Shown here in pieces: positions 37,824 through 63,747 of a DNA stretch of 64,000 bases (within the stretch, counting starts at the first letter, position 1; every line of letters starts with the position of its first letter). The notes beneath the pieces are model-generated. The model had not been told where the DNA came from. It made no database searches and saw only the letters and a list, made by a program, of their open reading frames with translations. The stretch covers positions 62,001 through 126,000 of the IMG/VR virus record IMGVR_UViG_3300009545_000018; one strand, written 5' to 3'. Position numbers and translations under genes: made by a program.

Positions 37824-39404
37824 TTGATTATGGTATCTAAAAATTTATTTAAGTCTACAGGTTCAGTTAAGAAAGCAATTAAACCAGTTAATGCTGTTAA
37901 TAATGCGGGCGGTGTGGCTTATACTATGGATGATAAGGCTGCCTTAGCGCAACTTGCCATGACTGGTTGTTTTAATGGAACTTATTATGTTGATGCTAAA
38001 GATCAACTTAATCAAGTTGTTGCTCTTGCTAATAAGCTTCCAGTAGAGTTCGTGGCAAAGTTAGCAGTATATGCTCGCCAAGAAGGTTTTATGAAGGATA
38101 TGCCTGCAGTATTAGCCGCAGTTGTTGCTAGCAAAGATACTGTTCTTTTATCCAAGATCTTTCCAAAGGTTATTGATAATCCAAAAATGGTTCGTAACTT
38201 TGTACAAGTTATTCGTTCTGGAGTAACAGGCAGAAAAAGTTTGGGAACCCGTCCTAAGAAATTAATTCAAAATTATTTGAATTCATTAACTGATGAGCAG
38301 TTGTTTAAGGCTGATGTAGGTAATAGCCCTTCATTACAAGATATTATTAAGTTAGCTCGTCCTAAGCCAGCTACTAAGAATCGCTCTGCTTTGTATGGTT
38401 ATTTGCTAGACAAGGAATATAATCCAGAAGACTTATGTTCCTTGGTTCAAGAGTTTGAATCTTTCAAAAAAGAAATGAGTTTGGATATTCCAAATGTTCC
38501 ATTTCAAATGTTAACAGCTTTGCCATTAACTGATAAGCATTGGAGCAAGATTGCTGAAAATGCAACCTGGAATCAAACCAGAATGAATTTAAATACTTTT
38601 GCTCGTCATAAGGTATTTGAAGATGCTACTACTTTAAACCTATTGGCTGAGAGATTAGCTGATTCTTCACAAATTGCAAAAGCAAAGGTATTCCCATATC
38701 AATTGTTTGCTGCATTTAAAAATGTAACTGCAGATGTTCCTAAGAAATTAACTAATGCTTTACAAAAAGCAGCGGATGCTTCGCTGGAAAATATTCCAGC
38801 TATTGAAGGTGAAGTTCACGTTTTAGTTGATGTATCAGGCAGCATGAGTAGCCCAGTCACTGGTAATCGTGGTTTTGTCACTAGTACTATGCGTTGTATT
38901 GATGTAGCAGCCTTAATGGCTTCTGCATTAATGCGCAAGAATGAAGATACTAAGGTATATCCATTTGATACTAGAGTTCATAATCATTCATTGAATCCAA
39001 TGGATTCAGTGATGACTAATGCGGCAACTCTTGCTGCATTTGGTGGTGGAGGAACTGATTGTGGTATGGCGTTAGAGAATTTAAATAAGCAGAAAGCCAA
39101 AGGCAATCTTGTTATTTATGTTTCTGATAATGAGTCTTGGGTAGATACTACTCCTAATTCCTATTATTCTCAAAGAGGTACTAAGGTAATGGAAGAGTGG
39201 AATAAATATAAAGCTCGTAATCCAAAAGCCAAATTGGTTTGTATTGATGTCACTCCTAATAAAACCACTCAAGCTCATAATAGAGAAGATATAATCAACA
39301 TTGCAGGATTTTCTGATCAAGTATTCGATGTTATTGCATTATTCCAAAAATTTGGCAATAATAAAGATCTTTGGGTTCAAACCATTGACTCAGTAGAAAT
39401 GTAA
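37824..39404 (+). CDS. rsr: Ro60 / TROVE-domain RNA-binding protein
   Basis: NNAGGVAY, LAQLAMTG.FNGTYY, YARQEGFMKDMP, MNLNTFARH, vWA DVSGSM, GGGGTDC, SDNESW. Confidence 0.93.
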   Translation: MIMVSKNLFKSTGSVKKAIKPVNAVNNAGGVAYTMDDKAALAQLAMTGCFNGTYYVDAKDQLNQVVALANKLPVEFVAKLAVYARQEGFMKDMPAVLAAVVASKDTVLLSKIFPKVIDNPKMVRNFVQVIRSGVTGRKSLGTRPKKLIQNYLNSLTDEQLFKADVGNSPSLQDIIKLARPKPATKNRSALYGYLLDKEYNPEDLCSLVQEFESFKKEMSLDIPNVPFQMLTALPLTDKHWSKIAENATWNQTRMNLNTFARHKVFEDATTLNLLAERLADSSQIAKAKVFPYQLFAAFKNVTADVPKKLTNALQKAADASLENIPAIEGEVHVLVDVSGSMSSPVTGNRGFVTSTMRCIDVAALMASALMRKNEDTKVYPFDTRVHNHSLNPMDSVMTNAATLAAFGGGGTDCGMALENLNKQKAKGNLVIYVSDNESWVDTTPNSYYSQRGTKVMEEWNKYKARNPKAKLVCIDVTPNKTTQAHNREDIINIAGFSDQVFDVIALFQKFGNNKDLWVQTIDSVEM

Positions 39405-39737: not shown

Positions 39738-40061
39738 ATGAAAACCATGTTGTTTGAAAAAACTATTAATTTAGTTAAAACTTTAAGAGAAACATTCACA
39801 ACTCGATGTTTACATAATCAAAAATTGCCCCTTTTTAGTTGGTTACATAGAAATTCTAGTAACTTTTCGAATGAAGAGTTTGAAGAGTTTTGGAAATTTT
39901 TAGTAATTTTATTTAAATATAAATATAAGGATATGAGCTTATTTTATGAAGCAGGAGAGTCTCCATTAGAAATGTTTGATTTTAGAGCAAACAAAGATCA
40001 AATCAATGACTTTATTTCTTTATTAGAAAATAAAATTAATAAATTGAAAGCTTTTATTTAA
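39738..40061 (+). CDS. small KAF-tag protein
   Basis: ends KLKAFI. Confidence 0.65.
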   Translation: MKTMLFEKTINLVKTLRETFTTRCLHNQKLPLFSWLHRNSSNFSNEEFEEFWKFLVILFKYKYKDMSLFYEAGESPLEMFDFRANKDQINDFISLLENKINKLKAFI

Positions 40062-40897
40062 TGATTAAAAGAAATGGTATTGAAATTAAGACTGCCCAAG
40101 CTCCAAATATAGTAGCAGCAAAAGATACTTTAAATATTCTTAAGAATAAAAATTATCTTGTTAAAGATAAGATCATAGATATTTCAGTGGCATTAGATAA
40201 TTCAATTAAAAATACTAAGTTATATTTGCCAGAAGATTGTTTTAATAGTAAAAATAATTTAATTAAACCTACTATAGAGGTAACAAATGAAACTACTACC
40301 TCTGCTGGGTTAAGATTATTAAATAGTGGTTTAGAAAATATTGTAGCTTTGAATTTTGCCTCAGCTAGAAATGTTGGGGGCGGATTTTTAGCGGGGGCAG
40401 TTGCCCAAGAAGAAGATTTGTGTCGGTGTTCTGGATTATATCTTTGTATTAAAAGCAAACCTATCTTTTATAATAAAAACATTTTATGTGATGATACTTT
40501 CTATACTAATCATATTATTTACTCACCCAATGTTCCTTTCTTTCGTAATGATAATCTAGATCTTTTAGAAGAGATATTCCACATTTCTATTATTTCTGCG
40601 CCCGCACCTAATGTTAGAGCTATGGAGAATGTTGATGAAGATAATTTAAGAAGCATATTAGAAATAAGGGCAGCTAGAATTTTACAGATTGCTATTGAAA
40701 ATAATCATGAAAATATTATCTTAGGAGCTTGGGGCTGTGGTGCTTTTGGTAATGATTCTAAAATGATAATTGAGGTTTTTCAAAAGGTATTAAATAGATA
40801 TCCTCATTTCAAACATGTTTGTTTTGCCGTCTTTGATAATAAAATAAATGCCCCTATTTTCAATGCATTTAAAGAAGCATTTGAAAATAATGAATGA
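40061..40897 (+). CDS. TIGR02452 / bacterial PARG-like ADP-ribose glycohydrolase
   Basis: LNFASARNVGGGF..GAVAQEEDLCRCS, LGAWGCGAFGND. Confidence 0.9.
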   Translation: MIKRNGIEIKTAQAPNIVAAKDTLNILKNKNYLVKDKIIDISVALDNSIKNTKLYLPEDCFNSKNNLIKPTIEVTNETTTSAGLRLLNSGLENIVALNFASARNVGGGFLAGAVAQEEDLCRCSGLYLCIKSKPIFYNKNILCDDTFYTNHIIYSPNVPFFRNDNLDLLEEIFHISIISAPAPNVRAMENVDEDNLRSILEIRAARILQIAIENNHENIILGAWGCGAFGNDSKMIIEVFQKVLNRYPHFKHVCFAVFDNKINAPIFNAFKEAFENNE

Positions 40898-46212: not shown

Positions 46213-46302
46213 GGGGAAGTAGCTCAGCCGGCCAGAGCGCTTTACTGTTTTATAAAACGAATAGTGAAGAGGTCGATGGTTCAAATCCATCCTTCCCCAC
46301 CA
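46213..46302 (+). tRNA. tRNA with 20-nt anticodon loop, identity uncertain
   Basis: GGGGAAG/CTTCCCC+ACCA, canonical D and T arms; anticodon arm extended to about 11 bp. Confidence 0.75.
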
Positions 46303-46374
46303 TGAATCAAATGCAGATAAGATTACATTTAACAGTTAATTAAAAAAGCATCTTATCAATAATTTGTTGATTCA
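46303..46374 (+). ncRNA. scaffold-family ncRNA copy A
   Basis: TGAATCAA/TTGATTCA, GATAAGAT/ATCTTATC, ATGC and TACATT motifs. Confidence 0.7.
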
Positions 46375-46380
46375 TTTAAT

Positions 46381-46653: not shown

Positions 46654-47622
46654 TTGAACTGTTATATATTCTGTATGATTGTCATACAGAAACGATCTTT
46701 TTCTTTAGAAGAGTTAAGAGAAATATTCAAAAGTTCATTGTCAAAGCAAGATGTTGCCATAAAGTTAGGTTTTACTTATAGTAATGGGAAAGTTTATAAA
46801 AAAATTGAGAAACTTTCTATTGAATATAATTTATCGACGGATCATTTTGATCCATTTTTAAGTCAAAGATTAAATACAAAATTTCCTAAAATAGAAAAAG
46901 AATGTCCTATATGCGGTAATTTATTTGAAACTAAACATGGACATCGTGATGAAAAAATTACTTGCTCAATATCATGCTCTAATACTTATTTTGCTCCTAG
47001 TAAACACACTGAATTATCAAATTTAAAAAGATCGTTAAAGCTTTTAAAAAATTCAAAAAATGAAACTGTCAATATAATAAAAGTTCGTAAAAAACGTAAA
47101 AAGAATTTTAAATTAAAAGCTGTTGTTTTATATATTAAGTCTTGTGAATTTTGTGATTATGATTTTGAAACTTATAATAAAAATAAAAGATTTTGCAATA
47201 TATCATGTCAAATCAAACATAATTGGGAAGATCCCAATTATCGTATTAATATTATAAATAAAGCTAATGAAAGAGTTACAAATGGAACCCATAATGGGTG
47301 GTCATCAAGATCAAAACTAAAACCTTCTTATGCTGAACAATATGTTATCAATCTTTTAGATGAGTTAAAAATAACAAATATTACTCGAGAATACAAAATT
47401 AACAAATGGTTTATTGATTTTGCTGATATAGATAGAAAATTAGCTTTAGAAATAGATGGTAAACAACATGAATTACCAGAACGTAAGGCTTCGGATCAAG
47501 TTAAAGATCAATATTTAAAAGATAATGGTTGGACCATTTTAAGAATAAAATGGAAAAAGATAACAGCAGAATTTAGAGAAGAATTAATAAAAGTTTTGCA
47601 AAATTTCACAAGGATCATATAA
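46654..47622 (+). CDS. homing endonuclease, Vsr/DUF559-like
   Basis: CPIC and CxxC Zn motifs, IDFAD..LALEIDGKQH..D..L..GWTILRIKW. Confidence 0.82.
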   Translation: MNCYIFCMIVIQKRSFSLEELREIFKSSLSKQDVAIKLGFTYSNGKVYKKIEKLSIEYNLSTDHFDPFLSQRLNTKFPKIEKECPICGNLFETKHGHRDEKITCSISCSNTYFAPSKHTELSNLKRSLKLLKNSKNETVNIIKVRKKRKKNFKLKAVVLYIKSCEFCDYDFETYNKNKRFCNISCQIKHNWEDPNYRINIINKANERVTNGTHNGWSSRSKLKPSYAEQYVINLLDELKITNITREYKINKWFIDFADIDRKLALEIDGKQHELPERKASDQVKDQYLKDNGWTILRIKWKKITAEFREELIKVLQNFTRII

Positions 47623-48053: not shown

Positions 48054-48215
48054 ATGAACGAAATAACTGATTTAAAACCGTATTTAAAATATAACAATGG
48101 CGTGGTTACCGTCTTGAAGGTATTAGCCTTCCCATTAAACTGGGTAGCTGATGTATTCGAAAATTGGAGTCGCAAGCGCACACAAAAGAAATGTGAAAAG
48201 TGGCTATCTGAATAA
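48054..48215 (+). CDS. small hypothetical protein (53 aa)
   Basis: AAGGA SD, MNEITDLKPYL...WLSE. Confidence 0.5.
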   Translation: MNEITDLKPYLKYNNGVVTVLKVLAFPLNWVADVFENWSRKRTQKKCEKWLSE

Positions 48216-48319
48216 TTTTATACTACTAGAGTAGTATTCTTTTATCTATACTGGTTGAGTTACCCAGCTAAAATATAAACTTCCAGGCACGGTAGCCTGG
48301 TTAATCAAAACCGATTTAT

Positions 48320-48397
48320 AGGCTTCTAGCTTAACTTTTAGAGCAAGGGACATAAAGAGTCCCGTGGATCTTGGTGTAAATCCAAGGGAGCCTGCCA
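48320..48397 (+). tRNA. atypical tRNA-like RNA (loop AT-AAA-GA)
   Basis: AGGCTTC/GGAGCCT+GCCA, GGGAC/GTCCC, T-loop TGTAAAT, D-loop lacks GG. Confidence 0.65.
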
Positions 48398-48402
48398 TTT
48401 AT

Positions 48403-48484
48403 TGCGGGGTAGAGGAGTATGGTTATCTCACCAGCCTCATAAGCTGTGGTATACGTGGGTTCAAATCCCACCCTTCCGCAACCA
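48403..48484 (+). tRNA. tRNA-Met(CAT)
   Basis: CT-CAT-AA loop, TTCAAAT T-loop, ACCA; slightly irregular acceptor junction. Confidence 0.8.
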
Positions 48485-48552
48485 CTGGATGGTGGTTACC
48501 AAATCCGCAAAGGGGTATAGAAATATACTCGGAGGATTGAATCCACTATTAT

Positions 48553-48687
48553 GCAATTCTGGTATAATGGCATTACTGACTCTAAAAAGAGTATCACTTA
48601 CAAAGAAACCTGTGAGGCTACCAGGAAATTATTGTAAGAATAACGCCTTGCCTGGCGTAGATGTTGGTTCGATTCCAACGGATTGCA
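48553..48687 (+). ncRNA. tRNA-like RNA with multi-hairpin central insertion
   Basis: GCAATTC/GGATTGC, D arm, GTTGG-TTCGATT-CCAAC; about 80 nt of hairpins replace anticodon/variable arm. Confidence 0.6.
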
Positions 48688-48691
48688 TTAA

Positions 48692-48782
48692 GTGATGTTT
48701 GATAAGTAATCACGCCAGAAACATGATTTATCATGTTTGCCCTGATCAGCCTGGTAGTTAGGTGCAAATCCTAAGCATCACA
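48692..48782 (+). ncRNA. tRNA-like RNA with branched anticodon arm
   Basis: GTGATGT/GCATCAC, TTAGG-TGCAAAT-CCTAA, AAACATGA/TCATGTTT hairpin inside CCAG/CTGG. Confidence 0.55.
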
Positions 48783-48798
48783 ACAACTGAGTTTATAT

Positions 48799-49079
48799 GC
48801 CCGAATCCCTATATTGGTTAAGACATATAGACAATAGTCCGGTCTTAGGCTACCATTAAGGAGTAATCCTTTTAGAGACCACTGCTTCGGTGTGGGCAAA
48901 CCCGGCATTTAGGTGGAAAGCCTAATAAATTTTGCTTGATTAAATAGTTTCTTGCTACAAGATCAACGGTGTACAACGAATCTTGCTATTTAATTGGGAA
49001 GTCTTATAATTGTGGACTTGGTGAAACAGGTATAAGGCGAATTACGCTCGATATTGGATAAAACTAACATTGGGCGCCA
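48799..49079 (+). ncRNA. 281-nt structured RNA ending in GCCA
   Basis: GCCCGA/TTGGGC terminal stem plus GCCA; GTAA, cTTCGg, GCAA tetraloops. Confidence 0.55.
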
Positions 49080-49143
49080 TGAATCAAATCCGTATAGGAA
49101 TACATTCGGAAAAAATAAATCTTATACACTACTTGTTGATTCA
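49080..49143 (+). ncRNA. scaffold-family ncRNA copy B
   Basis: TGAATCAA/TTGATTCA, GTATAGGA/TCTTATAC, TACATT. Confidence 0.7.
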
Positions 49144-49148
49144 ATTAT

Positions 49149-49225
49149 TGTCGATTAGCTCATCGTTAGAGCGCCCGGCCGTAAGAGTCTGGAGGTACTA
49201 GGTTCAATTCCTAGATCGACAACCA
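49149..49225 (+). tRNA. tRNA with irregular anticodon arm (Thr-CGT-like, uncertain)
   Basis: TGTCGAT/ATCGACA+ACCA, good D and T arms; loop region CCGTAAGAGT. Confidence 0.65.
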
Positions 49226-49337
49226 TGTAACAAATGCCAGGGCAGCATTACATTTATTGGAATTAAATCCGATGAGGCTCGACTCCTCTTAAGGTCCGGT
49301 GACAGGCAAAACATGTTGCTCATTATTTGTTGTTACA
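49226..49337 (+). ncRNA. scaffold-family ncRNA copy C
   Basis: TGTAACAA/TTGTTACA, GGCAGCAT/ATGTTGCT, TACATT; cargo includes GAGG-CTCGACT-CCTC. Confidence 0.7.
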
Positions 49338-49465
49338 AATTTTTGACAGTATATCTAAACTGTATAGTGTGAGTTATGCGCAAGGGATAATTACCTAAGT
49401 AGCAACTATAGGTTTGCTAGTTAATCCTACACATGAATCAGAGTTAACCTGAAAACTAGCACAAT

Positions 49466-49539
49466 GCGAGTATGGCATAATGGTTGTGTCCCATGTTTCC
49501 AACTTGGTTATCTCAGTTCGATTCTGAGTACTCGCTCCA
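49466..49539 (+). tRNA. tRNA-Gly(TCC)
   Basis: GCGAGTA/TACTCGC, T73, TT-TCC-AA, CCA. Confidence 0.9.
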
Positions 49540-49591
49540 TGCCCACTAACTTAATTACATAAAAGTAAGGTTGTCGGGGCGCCAAATTTAC

Positions 49592-49666
49592 GTTCTGGTC
49601 GTCTAAATAATTAGGACATCTCCGCGAAAGGGGAAGATATTGGAGAATTACCAATCTGGAGCGCCA
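49592..49666 (+). ncRNA. non-canonical tRNA-like RNA
   Basis: GTTCTGG/CTGGAGC+GCCA, T-loop AGAATTA, anticodon loop GCGAAA. Confidence 0.6.
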
Positions 49667-49753
49667 TAAGTTAGTGGCTGGAAATCATTTAAGCGAGTTC
49701 AAATGCAATAACAGTCCGCCTAATTGCTCGTATATTAGGTAACTTAATTTTAT

Positions 49754-49830
49754 GCCCCTGTCGTCGTAAAAAGTCAGGACATCTCCAGTAATAGGAGAAG
49801 ATGTTGGAGAATTGCCAACTGGGGGTGCCA
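49754..49830 (+). ncRNA. non-canonical tRNA-like RNA, paralog of 49592-49666
   Basis: GCCCCTG/TGGGGGT+GCCA, TCTCC/GGAGA, T-loop AGAATTG. Confidence 0.6.
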
Positions 49831-50132
49831 AAGGCAAGTAAGGACCAGGAAGCCTTATGAGCTGCTGGTTTTTCATATAGGGAACTAGCCTGGTTAGTCC
49901 TATATGAGAACCAACCAATGTCTTTAAATAAAGAAATTTATATAAGGACACCATGATTAATTTGTGCAGCTGACTTATATTGGATTTCGCGATCTGATAT
50001 ATGAGTGCTGGAAAATACGGAAAGTTGGAAAACTGATGCACACCGTATAAGTTAACTAAATCACTAACTGTTATTATCTACGCGAATAGATAAAAACAAA
50101 GTAATTAGTTAATTATAATTAATCAAAAACTT

Positions 50133-50226
50133 TAGCAAATGCAGTAAGGATTACATTGGTTATAGTCAATCGAAAGATTGATGGTGGGTATCGATTCCCA
50201 CAGTATCTTTACAAAACTTGTTGCTA
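50133..50226 (+). ncRNA. scaffold-family ncRNA copy D
   Basis: TAGCAA/TTGCTA, GTAAGGAT/ATCTTTAC, TACATT; cargo GNRA hairpin plus GTGGG-TATCGATT-CCCAC. Confidence 0.7.
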
Positions 50227-50230
50227 TTAT

Positions 50231-50367
50231 TCCGAGGTACGTCTAATGGTAAGACACGCGGCTGTGGGAACTATAGGTTAATAATAAGTCCCGTTCGATT
50301 CGGGCAGTTCCAAGAATAACCGCGCGGTGGTAACACTTTGTAGGTTCGAGTCCTACCCTCGGAGCCA
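50231..50367 (+). tRNA. tRNA-Asn(GTT)-like gene with 51-nt insertion in the anticodon
   Basis: TCCGAGG/CCTCGGA+GCCA; CGCGG-CTGT[50266-50316]TAA-CCGCG. Confidence 0.75.
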
Positions 50368-50392
50368 TTATATTAAATAAAAGGAAAGTACT

Positions 50393-53516: not shown

Positions 53517-53586
53517 ATGGACAAATTAGATAAGGATTACATTTTATTGGAAAAACAAACATCTTTGTCAACTACTTGTTGTCCAT
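53517..53586 (+). ncRNA. scaffold-family ncRNA copy E
   Basis: ATGGACAA/TTGTCCAT, GATAAGGAT/ATCTTTGTC, TACATT. Confidence 0.7.
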
Positions 53587-53859: not shown

Positions 53860-53862
53860 CTA

Positions 53863-54013
53863 TGAAAACAAATGCCCGTACAAGGATTACATTCATTATA
53901 GGAACGTGAAGAAAGTTCGATTCTTTCCGCAGCGACCAAACTAAAAACAATTGCTGCGTGGTGTATTGGTTAACACACGAAAAAAACATCTTTGTCAATT
54001 TTTGTTGTTTTCA
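53863..54013 (+). ncRNA. Y RNA-like ncRNA: scaffold copy F with circularly permuted tRNA domain
   Basis: TGAAAACAA/TTGTTTTCA, ACAAGGAT/ATCTTTGT; inside: T arm, CGCAGCG-ACCA, linker, TGCTGCG, D arm. Confidence 0.78.
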
Positions 54014-61940: not shown

Positions 61941-62477
61941 ATGTCTTATGAGGATAATTTTATAGTTTATGGACCATATTTATCTAAGGATACTGGACGT
62001 AAAATAGTTATTGTAAAATCTAAAAAAGATGGTACAAAAAGAACGATGACTTATCCACGATGGTTACTTGAAGTTCATATGGAAAAACCATTAGATTCTG
62101 ATTTAACTGTGGATCATTGGGACTCAAATCATACTAATGATTCTATTGATAATTTTAAGTTATTTCCAAGATCTGAACATTCATCTAATGATACCAGACG
62201 TGTTAAATTAGTTAAATTCAAATGTAAATGGTGTGACAAAGATTTTGAAAGAAGTCCCCGTCTTATTAGAGATAAATCTAAAAAAGATAAAGCCGGACCC
62301 TTTTGTTCTAGACCTTGTGCTGGCAAATATAGCAGAAAAGTACAGCTCAAATTAATTGATCCAATGGAAGCTCAGCCCATGATAGAAAGCGAATATTATA
62401 AGAAAAAATATGCGTCAGCCATCAATGATATGGTTGATATTTATATTGATTTTTGCTGTGATGTTTGGGAAGAATAA
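61941..62477 (+). CDS. HNH homing endonuclease
   Basis: TVDHWDSNHTNDSIDN, CKWC..FCS..C. Confidence 0.8.
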   Translation: MSYEDNFIVYGPYLSKDTGRKIVIVKSKKDGTKRTMTYPRWLLEVHMEKPLDSDLTVDHWDSNHTNDSIDNFKLFPRSEHSSNDTRRVKLVKFKCKWCDKDFERSPRLIRDKSKKDKAGPFCSRPCAGKYSRKVQLKLIDPMEAQPMIESEYYKKKYASAINDMVDIYIDFCCDVWEE

Positions 62478-62529
62478 ATTAAAATATTTGCAGTCTTGAC
62501 TTTTATTATTTACATTTTATATTGATGAC

Positions 62530-63039
62530 ATGGAAAAATACAATTATACTATTAGAGATAATTATTTATTATTTTGGCACAGTCACTTTTCAAATTGGTA
62601 TCCAGCAAATTTTATAATTGACATTGCTGATGTGGGTACCATGAGATTTAATTGTGCCGAACAATATATGATGTATATGAAGGCAAAAACTTTTGATGAT
62701 AAATCTATAATGTCCAGTATTATTAATACAAATGATCCAAAAGAACAAAAAAGACTTGGTAGAGACGTTAAAAATTTTAATCCGATAGTTTGGGACAAAC
62801 TAAAAGAACCAGTAGTATATTATGCATGTTTGGCTAAGTATTCGCAGAATGAAGACCTTAAAAAGGACATTCTTGATACTAAAGATTTAATCTTAGTAGA
62901 AGCATCACCTTATGATAAAATTTGGGGAATTGGCATGGCAGAGAGTGATCCTGATGCTACTAATGAAAGTAAGTGGAAGGGTCAAAATTTATTAGGCAAA
63001 GCTTTAATGAAAGTAAGAAATACTTTGAGGTCTAAATGA
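62530..63039 (+). CDS. NADAR (YbiA/DUF1768) family hydrolase
   Basis: FSNWY, AEQYMMYMKA, KRLGR, LVEASPYDKIWGIG, GQNLLGKALM. Confidence 0.93.
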   Translation: MEKYNYTIRDNYLLFWHSHFSNWYPANFIIDIADVGTMRFNCAEQYMMYMKAKTFDDKSIMSSIINTNDPKEQKRLGRDVKNFNPIVWDKLKEPVVYYACLAKYSQNEDLKKDILDTKDLILVEASPYDKIWGIGMAESDPDATNESKWKGQNLLGKALMKVRNTLRSK

Positions 63040-63356
63040 AAAAAGATAATTTAAATAATTTTTTTAAAGGTTGGACGATTGGGAATATAACCCCAACACT
63101 TATCAAAACTAATGAATTTGAATTTGCTATAAAAAAATATAAAGCTGGAGATTTTGAAAATTTACATCATCATAAAATTGCCCAAGAAATTACATATATT
63201 ATTTCTGGTGAAGTTGAAATGAATGGTGAAAAATTTGTCGCTGATGATATTATAATTATTGACCCCAATGAAAGCACCGATTTCAAATGCTTATCAGATT
63301 CTATTACTGCAGTAATTAAATATCCCGGCGCCAATAACGATAAATATATAGATTAA
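63036..63356 (+). CDS. cupin-domain protein
   Basis: HHHKIAQEITYIISG. Confidence 0.75.
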   Translation: MKKDNLNNFFKGWTIGNITPTLIKTNEFEFAIKKYKAGDFENLHHHKIAQEITYIISGEVEMNGEKFVADDIIIIDPNESTDFKCLSDSITAVIKYPGANNDKYID

Positions 63357-63459
63357 AGAATTAACTTTAATTTTTTAAAATTTTGTATTGTTGACAAAAT
63401 TTTTTTAGTGGCTAAACTAGTTGCGGTAAAAAGACTAAAATGTCTAAAAATTATTTTAA

Positions 63460-63747
63460 TTGGAGTCAATTATGAATCAAGAAGTTACATCATTAATCAA
63501 AAATATTGAAATTGTATTTAGTGCTACTGAAACCAACTTACAAGCTATGAGTGTTGGTGAACGTATTCAAATGAAAGATTTAACAGCTGCCGTGGGGCTA
63601 GCTGTTGCAAAAGATCCTAAAGATATTTTGCCTTTCGTAAGCTATTTTGTCCATAACACCTCCTTAGCTTATGTTAGCCGAGGTAAAAATGGCGGAATCA
63701 TTCGTGGAGCCAAGTCAGTAAAGAACGAATCAACTCAAACAGTTTAA
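63460..63747 (+). CDS. putative winged-helix protein, paralog of 26332-26694
   Basis: ATETNL..S..Q..L ... VSRGKNGGII; preceded by TTGACA-N16-TAAACT. Confidence 0.55.
   Translation: MESIMNQEVTSLIKNIEIVFSATETNLQAMSVGERIQMKDLTAAVGLAVAKDPKDILPFVSYFVHNTSLAYVSRGKNGGIIRGAKSVKNESTQTV

What the first reader, a model, noticed from the sequence alone, without database searches (positions are those of the whole stretch)
48799..49079. 281-nt highly structured RNA closed by an acceptor-like stem and ending in GCCA
Seen: 5' GCCCGA pairs with TTGGGC, followed by GCCA. The interior has AAGGA-GTAA-TCCTT, a cTTCGg hairpin, a GG-GCAA-ACC-type loop, TTAGG/CCTAA and a long TTAAATAG/CTATTTAA stem. Scaffold copy B starts at the next base. 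It is not tmRNA (no G3:U70, no TTCRA T arm). Inference: a large, possibly aminoacylatable or CCA-matured ncRNA. Large ornate RNAs (GOLLD, ROOL) are known near phage tRNA clusters, but I cannot assign this one.
Basis: partly seen in the sequence, partly recalled or inferred. Interest (0 to 1): 0.75.

Follow-up and report, generated by a model that had tools for sequence, protein, structure and literature searches.

The report
Oversized tRNA-like RNA in phage array
A 281-base non-coding stretch in a 448-kb soil phage sits where a tRNA gene would sit and has tRNA-type ends, but its middle is replaced by unrelated hairpins; it is most likely a lineage-specific tRNA mimic or decayed tRNA, and no relative or transcript was found to prove it works.

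Summary
"Highly structured" holds only in part: the whole RNA folds no better than shuffles (z -0.92). Only the 3' half is stable in a strand-specific way (z -2.9 on +, -0.3 on -). The GCCCGA/UUGGGC closure competes about 50:50 with a local 34-nt minihelix.

Both ends lie in tRNA-type context. The 5' G follows the AU that precedes most of this phage's 39 tRNAs. The 3' G-CCA ends a degenerate T-arm/acceptor helix and is followed, at the usual spacing, by a conserved post-tRNA element. An internal hairpin is paralogous to the T arm of the adjacent tRNA-like gene.

It matches no Rfam family. It fails the tests for tRNA, tmRNA, YrlA, RNase P RNA and group I intron. No homolog turned up in 16 related huge phages, the phage database, IMG/VR or JGI metagenomes. 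No RNA run was listed.

Best reading (0.42): a tRNA-derived mimic processed like a tRNA. Main rival (0.30): decayed tRNA debris.

Context adds interest. The phage encodes a Ro60 protein, and five relatives encode their own RNase P RNA, which this genome lacks.

The parts
48799..49079 (+). The 281-nt tRNA-slot element as a whole
   Evidence: Non-coding. No Rfam family up to E = 10. ARAGORN finds no tRNA or tmRNA even with 250-nt introns and a lowered threshold.
48799..48805 (+). 5' acceptor-like strand GCCCGAA, preceded by ...UUUAUAU
   Evidence: Pairs with 49070-49075, ensemble probability 0.49. By my count of the table, the AU at -2/-1 precedes about two thirds of this genome's 39 tRNAs. It can also pair with UGGGC at 48893-48897 (p 0.30).
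48809..48830 (+). D-arm-like hairpin CUAUAU-UGGUUAAGAC-AUAUAG, with GG at RNA positions 18-19
   Evidence: Read from the sequence. It is not formed in the MFE. The 6-pair stem is atypical for a D arm.
48837..48906 (+). GUCCGG ... CCCGGC helix (48837-48842 with 48902-48906, bulged U) enclosing the two capped hairpins
   Evidence: Four G-C pairs. The strands resemble the RNase P P4 strands of relatives. Collinear homology is not significant (p = 0.13). Ensemble probability is below 0.001 in the nested model.
48858..48871 (+). GNRA-capped hairpin AAGGA-GUAA-UCCUU
   Evidence: Five perfect pairs.
48879..48895 (+). UUCG-capped hairpin with one bulge
   Evidence: Read from the sequence. The MFE uses a 5-pair variant.
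48909..48925 (+). T-loop-type hairpin UUAGG-UGGAAAG-CCUAA
   Evidence: With its 5' flank (48901-48925) it is paralogous to the variable region and T arm of the neighbouring tRNA-like gene at 48750-48774. None of 200 shuffles reached that score. Pair probability is 0.4-0.6.
48935..48998 (+). Long hairpin, 13-pair base (3 G.U) plus inner stem
   Evidence: In the MFE. z = -2.3 on +.
49001..49038 (+). Hairpin GUCUUAUA.../...UAUAAGGC
   Evidence: Eight pairs, probability about 0.6. A sigma-70-like TTGCTA-16-TATAAT lies at 48983-49010 and overlaps its 5' side.
49046..49079 (+). 3' minihelix: GCUCGAU, degenerate T arm (AUUGG-AUAAAA-CUAAC), acceptor 3' strand AUUGGGC, then G-CCA
   Evidence: Pairs listed. 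Probability 0.51. Aligns with the T arm, acceptor and CCA of tRNA 46213-46302. The 201-281 segment gives z = -3.2 on + and -0.8 on -.
49080..49148 (+).
   Evidence: Homologous to 46303-46380, which follows a tRNA. The same element follows tRNA CCA ends at 5-7 nt in this genome and in relatives.
48694..48784 (+). Adjacent upstream degenerate tRNA-like gene, the source of the paralogy
   Evidence: ARAGORN calls it only at a lowered threshold. Its T loop is UGCAAAU. Paralogy shown.

Best explanation
The 281 nt are a tRNA-derived, gene-like unit occupying a tRNA slot in the + strand tRNA/ncRNA array of a 448-kb phage.

Shown:
- The 5' end lies in the same leader context as the phage's tRNAs.
- The 3' end is a degenerate T-arm/acceptor helix with encoded G-CCA. 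It is followed at canonical spacing by the conserved element that follows real tRNAs.
- An internal T-loop hairpin is a paralog of the neighbour's T arm.
- The space where an anticodon arm should be is filled by capped hairpins plus a 140-nt, strand-specifically stable extension.

Inferred:
- It is co-transcribed with the flanking tRNAs.
- It is cut at 48798/48799 by host RNase P and ends at the encoded CCA. This would give an RNA of about 281 nt, or 247 + 34 nt if RNase P uses the local minihelix instead.
- It cannot decode. It most likely acts as a tRNA mimic, a ligand or decoy for tRNA-binding factors.
- The most specific candidate partner is the phage's own Ro60 protein, together with its RNA ligases and CCA-type nucleotidyltransferases.
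For: - 3' context: CCA followed by UGAAUC and AAAU..., as after tRNA 46213-46302 and after many tRNAs in relatives.
- 5' context: AU at -2/-1, as before most of the 39 tRNAs.
- Acceptor complementarity between two independently defined ends, with 0.49 ensemble probability.
- T-arm paralogy.
- The 3' half is stable only on the + strand.
- G+C is 0.46 in the 5' part and 0.36 in the 3' part, against about 0.30 for the genome.
- Neighbouring odd tRNA-likes 49592-49666 and 49754-49830 keep every stem except one D-stem pair in the second copy (G.G), through changes on both sides, so such RNAs are under structural selection here.
- Relatives carry other non-tRNA structured RNAs in the same arrays.
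- The genome encodes Ro60, three RNA-ligase homologs and two CCA-type enzymes.
- Bacterial Y RNAs are tRNA mimics, and one of them is RNase P-cleaved and CCA-tailed (PMC4201824).
Against: - No homolog anywhere, so no covariation is available.
- No transcript data.
- The whole-RNA and 5'-half folds are no better than shuffles.
- The T arm next to the acceptor is degenerate, with an A.C mismatch and a 6-nt loop lacking UUC.
- The terminal closure is only one of two equally probable folds.
- The Ro60 motif GNCGAAN0-1G is not met at the 5' end, which reads GCCCGAAUC.
- No YrlA hit.
Confidence: 0.42

Rival explanations
1. Decayed tRNA debris. The stretch is a mosaic of broken and duplicated tRNA-gene pieces in a rapidly rearranging array. 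It is transcribed, if at all, only as spacer and has no function of its own.
For: - It is absent from all relatives, although their arrays are syntenic.
- Array content differs strongly between relatives.
- A DUF559 endonuclease gene lies inside the array at 46654-47622.
- The T arm is degenerate and there is no anticodon arm.
- The 5' half folds no better than shuffles.
- Several other degenerate or insert-bearing tRNA-likes lie nearby.
Against: - It has diverged beyond recognition from its paralogs yet keeps G+C of 0.36-0.46 in a 0.30 genome.
- It keeps perfect 5-13-pair stems, a complementary acceptor pair, the encoded CCA and the exact spacing to the downstream element.
- The stability of the 3' half is strand-specific.
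Confidence: 0.3
2. Not one RNA. A dead tRNA-like remnant (48799-48925) is followed by an internal promoter and leader. A separate 34-nt CCA-ended minihelix (49046-49079) is processed together with tRNA-Leu.
For: - The local minihelix is as probable as the long-range closure (0.51 against 0.49) and is the MFE choice.
- A sigma-70-like TTGCTA-16-TATAAT with 10 of 12 matches lies at 48983-49010.
- Other CCA-ended minihelix-like elements, read by eye, occur at 49541-49595 and inside the insert of 50231-50367.
Against: - Promoter-like hits are at chance frequency in this region: 24 found, 21 expected.
- The 5' strand sits exactly where an acceptor strand should, 2-3 nt before a D-like hairpin with GG at positions 18-19, and it pairs with the 3' strand.
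Confidence: 0.12
3. A relic or miniature of the clade's RNase P RNA. Five relatives encode a type-A RNase P RNA that this genome lacks. The element's 5' third carries P4-like strands in the P2-P3-P4...P2'-P4' order.
For: - RNase P RNA at 247-308 bits in G002, G003, G013, G015 and G016; none in this genome.
- AAUAGUCCGG and GCAAACCCGGCAUUUAGG resemble the relatives' CR-I and CR-V, with the bulged U in place.
- The summed best matches to 11 conserved RNase P blocks score 49.0. Shuffles give 23.2 +/- 8.4 (p = 0.005), and 1.1% of 469 array windows from relatives reach that score.
Against: - No Rfam RNase P hit up to E = 10.
- nhmmer with the relatives' profile finds nothing, even in the element alone.
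- The collinear chained profile score is not significant (p = 0.13).
- The best block matches fall at the wrong positions or in the wrong order.
- It is not syntenic. The RNase P slot at 62477-63460 holds two ORFs.
- The motif test was designed after I had seen the motifs.
Confidence: 0.05
4. A tmRNA-like or otherwise aminoacylatable RNA.
For: - Acceptor-like closure with encoded CCA.
- A tag-like frame GCA AAC CCG GCA UUU AGG UGG AAA GCC UAA UAA at 48896-48928, read.
Against: - ARAGORN tmRNA search negative at a lowered threshold.
- No Rfam tmRNA hit.
- C3-G70 rather than G3:U70, a G73 discriminator and no GGUUCGA T arm.
- The tag-like frame overlaps the T-arm paralog, and the paralogous neighbour has a stop in that frame.
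Confidence: 0.02

Closest known systems
Bacterial and phage Y RNAs of the YrlA type (Rfam RF02553), partners of Ro60/Rsr
   Same: A non-coding tRNA mimic in a genome that encodes Ro60. Its ends can form a long interrupted terminal stem. M. smegmatis YrlA is cut by RNase P and receives CCA (PMC4201824). Jumbo phages with TROVE proteins are expected to have a tRNA-like partner (PMC7824862).
   Different: - 281 nt against 80-130 nt.
- No RF02553 hit.
- The near-invariant T and D stem-loops are absent.
- The 5' motif GNCGAAN0-1G is not met.
- The gene lies 9.4 kb from Ro60 rather than adjacent to it.
tmRNA (SsrA)
   Same: A tRNA-like acceptor end with CCA that closes a large internal domain where the anticodon arm would be.
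   Different: - No G3:U70.
- No canonical T arm.
- No detectable pseudoknot series.
- ARAGORN and Rfam are both negative.
tRNA-like processing signals and non-tRNA RNase P substrates (plant mitochondrial t-elements, PMC1920247; pre-4.5S RNA, phage C4 antisense RNA, plant viral tRNA-like structures, PMC11143913). From my own memory, the stable 'species 1' RNA of the T4 tRNA cluster.
   Same: An acceptor/T-type minihelix with CCA could direct RNase P and 3' trimming, releasing an RNA that is not a tRNA from a tRNA-rich transcript.
   Different: No sequence relation to any of them. Processing was not tested here.
Type-A RNase P RNA (RF00010) of related phages
   Same: Short P4-like strands with a bulged U, preceded and followed by A-rich joiners.
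   Different: Fails the model, profile and collinearity tests. It has no specificity domain and is not syntenic.
'RNA X', an unnamed structured RNA of about 280 nt in the tRNA arrays of G013, G015 and IMGVR_UViG_3300028558_000791 (L125:11974-12250)
   Same: Similar size, the same kind of location inside the array, no Rfam family, and a weak 30-nt resemblance at the element's 3' end.
   Different: A profile of RNA X does not hit the window. RNA X shows helices that covary among three sequences, read by eye. The element has no relatives to test.

Membership tests
tRNA (RF00005) | Recognised as a cloverleaf by tRNA models | tested here: not met
   No Rfam tRNA hit over 48799-49079. ARAGORN is negative with introns up to 250-300 nt and a lowered threshold, also after removing RNA positions 128-270.
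tRNA (RF00005) | 7-pair acceptor stem, discriminator base and CCA | tested here: inconclusive
   Six pairs plus an A.A, then G and CCA. A local alternative is equally probable.
tRNA (RF00005) | Anticodon arm with a 7-nt loop | tested here: not met
   No 5-pair stem with a 7-nt loop in the right place. Hairpins capped by GUAA and UUCG stand there instead.
tRNA (RF00005) | T arm with a UUCRANY loop next to the acceptor 3' strand | tested here: not met
   AUUGG-AUAAAA-CUAAC has an A.C mismatch and a 6-nt loop.
tmRNA (RF00023 and relatives) | G3:U70, a T arm, and detection by ARAGORN or Rfam | tested here: not met
   C3-G70 with the G.U at pair 5. ARAGORN -m is negative. No Rfam tmRNA match on the element.
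tmRNA (RF00023 and relatives) | Tag reading frame with a resume codon and stop | tested here: inconclusive
   A 9-codon frame ending UAA UAA exists. It overlaps the T-arm paralog and is not kept in the neighbouring paralog.
YrlA / Y RNA (RF02553, RF00019) | Match to the family model | tested here: not met
   No hit on the element. Genome-wide hits are sub-threshold; the one I checked in this genome lies on the tandem tRNA(CUA) pair.
YrlA / Y RNA (RF02553, RF00019) | GNCGAAN0-1G (or GGUCCGA) near the 5' end (PMC4201824) | tested here: not met
   The 5' end reads GCCCGAAUC. It matches only the looser pattern GNCCGAA.
YrlA / Y RNA (RF02553, RF00019) | A Ro60 ortholog encoded nearby | tested here: inconclusive
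   A TROVE + vWA_Ro60 protein is encoded at 37824-39404, 9.4 kb upstream rather than adjacent. The complex prediction was not folded.
RNase P RNA, bacterial type A (RF00010) | Match to the family model, or to the profile of the relatives' RNase P RNAs | tested here: not met
RNase P RNA, bacterial type A (RF00010) | Collinear conserved regions CR-I to CR-V | tested here: not met
   Chained profile score 33.6 against 27.7 +/- 4.4, p = 0.13. The order-free motif sum gives p about 0.01, in a test designed after seeing the motifs.
Group I intron (RF00028) in a tRNA | Match to the model, with tRNA exons flanking | tested here: not met
   No Rfam hit. No tRNA is recovered with an intron of any length up to 250-300 nt.
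GOLLD / ROOL / other large ornate RNAs | Match to the Rfam models | tested here: not met
   No hit up to E = 10.

The most novel reading that the evidence does not exclude
The element is a functional, RNase P- and CCA-matured giant tRNA mimic that serves the phage's own Ro60 protein as a Y-RNA-type partner. It would be part of a phage tRNA surveillance and repair module (Ro60, RNA ligases, CCA enzymes). The module would belong to a huge-phage clade whose other members even encode their own RNase P RNA.
Probability: 0.12. Interest if true: 0.75.

Novelty: new variant of a known kind. Interest (0 to 1): 0.45.

Why it matters
If it is real, it would show that the tRNA arrays of huge phages are not only codon-supply depots. 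They would also breed fast-evolving tRNA mimics that reuse tRNA ends for processing and replace the decoding arm with other modules.

The context makes this testable:
- a phage Ro60 protein with no known RNA partner;
- several RNA ligases;
- a conserved element after tRNA 3' ends that in some copies carries the Ro60-binding motif;
- bona fide RNase P RNA genes in five relatives.

If it is debris, it still documents how fast these arrays turn over.

Tried and rejected
- **Rfam:** searched at gathering and E-value thresholds over the window, the array and the element alone. Only tRNAs were found.
- **ARAGORN:** tRNA and tmRNA searches with long introns, lowered thresholds and one trimmed construct. 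Negative for the element.
- **Homolog searches, all negative for the element:**
  - blastn against the phage collection;
  - BLAST in 16 related huge-phage records found through the terminase. Two 14-nt hits lay in coding DNA;
  - nhmmer in syntenic arrays and in 54 CoaD-anchored loci;
  - an exact 18-mer in IMG/VR;
  - a CoaD-anchored scan of JGI metagenomes, which returned only the source contig;
  - a 20-mer in GTDB genomes, which gave one chance hit in coding-looking DNA.
- **Paralogs and duplication:** no paralogs by short-word BLAST in the genome. An internal tandem duplication is not supported.
- **Sequencing runs:** one DNA run, the likely source. No RNA run was listed.
- **RNA X:** its profile does not hit the window.
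- **RNase P derivation:** profile and collinear tests are negative.
- **Ro60 plus RNA complex:** the job was not folded and gives no evidence either way.
- **Promoter and terminator scan:** at chance level.
- **Literature:** searches found no description of such an element or of phage-encoded RNase P RNA. This is absence in the held library only.

Full report
**Where it lies.** The window is bases 62001-126000 of a single 447,763-bp IMG/VR virus record. CheckV rates it 100% complete, and it came from a rhizosphere metagenome. Genome G+C is about 0.30, but the 48-50 kb bin reaches 0.395. The element lies in a stretch of about 2.2 kb (48200-50390) that has no plausible + strand gene. That stretch is packed with + strand tRNAs and tRNA-like sequences. 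The genome has 39 ARAGORN tRNAs, all on the + strand and nearly all with encoded CCA.

**Checking the observation.** As a whole the RNA is not more stable than dinucleotide shuffles: -70.3 against -66.0 +/- 4.7 kcal/mol, z = -0.92. Split in two, the picture changes:
- The 5' 127 nt give z = -0.2.
- The 3' 154 nt give z = -2.9 on + but -0.3 on the reverse complement.
- The last 81 nt give z = -3.2 against -0.8.

The 3' half therefore carries strand-specific, G.U-dependent structure. Only one clean tetraloop hairpin is present (AAGGA-GUAA-UCCUU), and 14% of shuffles have at least one.

The terminal closure GCCCGA/UUGGGC has ensemble probability 0.49. The same 3' strand pairs locally with GCUCGAU (49046-49052) at 0.51 and is the MFE choice.

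**Why the ends are nevertheless tRNA-type ends.**

*3' end.* The 69 nt after the element are homologous to the 78 nt after the tRNA-like gene 46213-46302. The alignment runs back through CCA, the acceptor 3' strand and the T arm.

The first part of this spacer is a conserved element. It reads CCA, then 5-7 nt, then [G/A]AC[G/A]AAUG, a small hairpin, and (A/U)UUACAUU. It follows many bona fide tRNAs here and in related phages. By eye, the inner hairpin covaries: CCC/GGG, CCU/AGG, CUA/UAG, UCC/GGA. The element's GCCA is followed by UGAAUC and AAAUCC-GUAUA-GGAAUACAUU at the same spacing.

In this register the last 34 nt read GCUCGAU / AUUGG-AUAAAA-CUAAC / AUUGGGC / G / CCA. That is a degenerate T arm stacked on an acceptor helix.

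*5' end.* The first G is preceded by AU. By my count of the table, that dinucleotide precedes about two thirds of the 39 tRNAs. The 5' strand is followed after 3 nt by a hairpin whose loop carries GG at positions 18-19.

*Interior.* RNA positions 103-127 (CCCGGCAUUUAGGUGGAAAGCCUAA) are paralogous to the variable region and T arm of the adjacent degenerate tRNA-like gene at 48694-48784. None of 200 shuffles reached that score. Its loop UGGAAAG, like UGCAAAU and UGUAAAU in two neighbours, fits the general T-loop motif as I know it, but not the tRNA UUC.

**What it is not.** There is no Rfam family up to E = 10. ARAGORN finds no tRNA or tmRNA under permissive settings. No YrlA, RNase P, group I, GOLLD or ROOL match was found.

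**No relatives.** The terminase finds 225 related loci in IMG/VR, at up to 89% amino-acid identity. None of the 16 large records searched holds a homolog, although their tRNA arrays are syntenic. Profile searches in those arrays and in 54 further CoaD-anchored loci are negative. A metagenome scan returns only the source contig. No RNA-seq run was listed. Covariation and expression therefore could not be tested.

**Context that bears on function.**

1. *Odd tRNA-likes are under selection.* Other odd tRNA-likes in the same zone appear to be under structural selection. The paralogs 49592-49666 and 49754-49830 have T loops AGAAUUA and AGAAUUG, anticodon loops GCGAAA and AGUAAUA, and G-CCA ends. 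They keep every stem apart from one D-stem pair (G.G in the second copy). In the acceptor stem only 2 of 7 positions have an identical pair, and double changes occur in the acceptor and T stems.
2. *Relatives have other array RNAs.* Relatives carry a different structured RNA of about 280 nt ('RNA X') between the post-tRNA element and a tRNA-Asn. By eye it has helices that covary among three sequences. Non-tRNA RNAs that turn over quickly are thus a feature of these arrays.
3. *The phage encodes Ro60.* The protein (TROVE 32.5 bits, vWA_Ro60 58 bits) is encoded at 37824-39404.
   - It is conserved at 65-70% identity in five relatives, always a few kb upstream of the array.
   - It is 50% identical to the TROVE protein of Myxococcus phage Mx1, which also sits among tRNAs.
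   - No canonical YrlA is found in any of these phages.
   - Bacterial Y RNAs are tRNA mimics, and one is RNase P-cleaved and CCA-tailed (PMC4201824).
   - TROVE proteins of jumbo phages are thought to work with a tRNA-like partner (PMC7824862).
4. *Other RNA enzymes.* The genome also has three RNA_ligase-family hits above the cut-off and two PolyA_pol/CCA-type enzymes.

**The RNase P lead.** The motifs AAUAGUCCGG and GCAAACCCGGCAUUUAGG looked like the P4 strands of RNase P RNA, so I searched RF00010 in the relatives. Five of them carry a bona fide type-A RNase P RNA of 247-308 bits, against a gathering score of 100. In the two relatives where both flanks matched (G013 and G002), the gene lies between homologs of window ORFs 61941-62477 and 63460-63747. 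This genome has none, and two small ORFs fill that gap.

The tests of the element against those RNAs came out as follows:
- An order-free sum of matches to 11 conserved RNase P blocks is high for the element: 49.0 against 23.2 +/- 8.4 for shuffles, and 1.1% of 469 array windows reach it.
- That test was designed after seeing the motifs, and the best block matches fall at the wrong positions.
- A collinear chained profile score is not significant (p = 0.13).
- nhmmer finds nothing.

I keep this reading as a low-probability rival.

**Verdict.** The stretch is best read as a lineage-specific, tRNA-derived unit with tRNA-type ends and a non-tRNA interior. I put 0.42 on it being a processed tRNA mimic, with the Ro60-partner version at about 0.12. 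I put 0.30 on inert tRNA debris, 0.12 on two separate pieces, 0.05 on an RNase P relic and 0.02 on a tmRNA-like or chargeable RNA. Which steps are shown and which are inferred is set out under the best explanation.

Noticed in passing
window 37824-39404 (+): A Ro60 ortholog (TROVE plus Ro60-type vWA domain, 526 aa). It is conserved at 65-70% identity in five related huge phages, a few kb upstream of their tRNA arrays. It is 50% identical to the TROVE protein of Myxococcus phage Mx1, which also lies among tRNAs. No canonical Y RNA was found in any of them.
   Followed up: partly
G016:C1:51723-52066, G002:C1:411691-412037(-), G013:C1:58158-58489, G015:C1:36384-36715, G003:C1:415917-416284; syntenic gap at window 62477-63460: Five related huge phages encode a bona fide bacterial type-A RNase P RNA (247-308 bits, gathering score 100). 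In G013 and G002 it lies between phage genes that have homologs on both sides in this window. This genome has none, and no RnpA protein was found in any of the five genomes tested. The papers I searched do not mention phage-encoded RNase P RNA.
   Followed up: partly
window 46303-46335, 49080-49112, 49226-49262, 50131-50163, 53517-53549, 53861-53900; L105:5954, 6410, 8297, 9952; L106:6067, 6407; L107:6349; L115:11440, 12001, 13701; L121:12474, 15880; L110(-): A conserved post-tRNA element lies 5-7 nt after tRNA CCA ends. It reads [G/A]AC[G/A]AAUG, a small hairpin that covaries by eye, then (A/U)UUACAUU. Long forms run on into a T-arm-like hairpin and ...CACUGCAACCA. The GACGAAUG form matches the Ro60-binding motif GNCGAAN0-1G of bacterial Y RNAs (PMC4201824).
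   Followed up: partly
window 50231-50367, 46213-46302, 48552-48688; L108:11176-11424: Several tRNA genes carry inserts in the anticodon loop: about 50 nt, 13 nt, about 44-60 nt, and 160 nt in a relative. These are too short for group I introns. The unit at 50231 shares its acceptor stem with the relatives' tRNA-Asn. No uninterrupted tRNA-Asn was found in this genome, and by eye the insert folds as an acceptor/T-arm minihelix. The splice points could not be fixed.
   Followed up: partly
window 49592-49666 and 49754-49830: Two paralogous odd tRNA-likes with T loops AGAAUUA and AGAAUUG, no GG in the D loop, non-standard anticodon loops and G-CCA ends. They keep every stem except one D-stem pair (G.G in the second copy), through one- and two-sided changes.
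   Followed up: partly
window 49840-50130: An exceptionally stable predicted structure: z = -6.5 on + and -4.2 on -. It lies just upstream of a post-tRNA element and overlaps a 118-aa minus-strand ORF that may be spurious.
   Followed up: no
L125:11974-12250, L144:12256-12533, L115:12214-12541 (3' part also in L113 and L121): 'RNA X', an RNA of about 280 nt with no Rfam match, lies between a post-tRNA element and tRNA-Asn in related phages. By eye it has covarying helices, including two apparent pseudoknots such as GAUAGUU/AGCUAUC against UAUAGUU/AGCUAUA.
   Followed up: partly
G000:C1:212881-213035 (outside the window): Two adjacent tRNAs with anticodon CUA, which ARAGORN labels Pyl. They would read TAG and hint at amber suppression or recoding in part of the genome.
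   Followed up: no
window 48320-48397: A near-canonical cloverleaf with anticodon AAA, T loop UGUAAAU, no GG in the D loop and a G-CCA end. ARAGORN calls it, but Rfam's tRNA model does not.
   Followed up: no
window 46654-47622; 40061-40897; G000:C1:44638-45156, 140899-141393, 201161-201634, 266533-266928, 295333-295704: A DUF559/Vsr-type endonuclease gene lies inside the tRNA array. A microbial-type PARG gene lies downstream of Ro60. Elsewhere in the genome there are three RNA-ligase-family and two CCA/poly(A)-polymerase-family genes. Together these form an RNA repair and maturation toolkit.
   Followed up: no
window 48983-49010: A sigma-70-like TTGCTA-16-TATAAT (10 of 12 matches) lies inside the element. 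Promoter-like hits are at chance frequency in this region.
   Followed up: no
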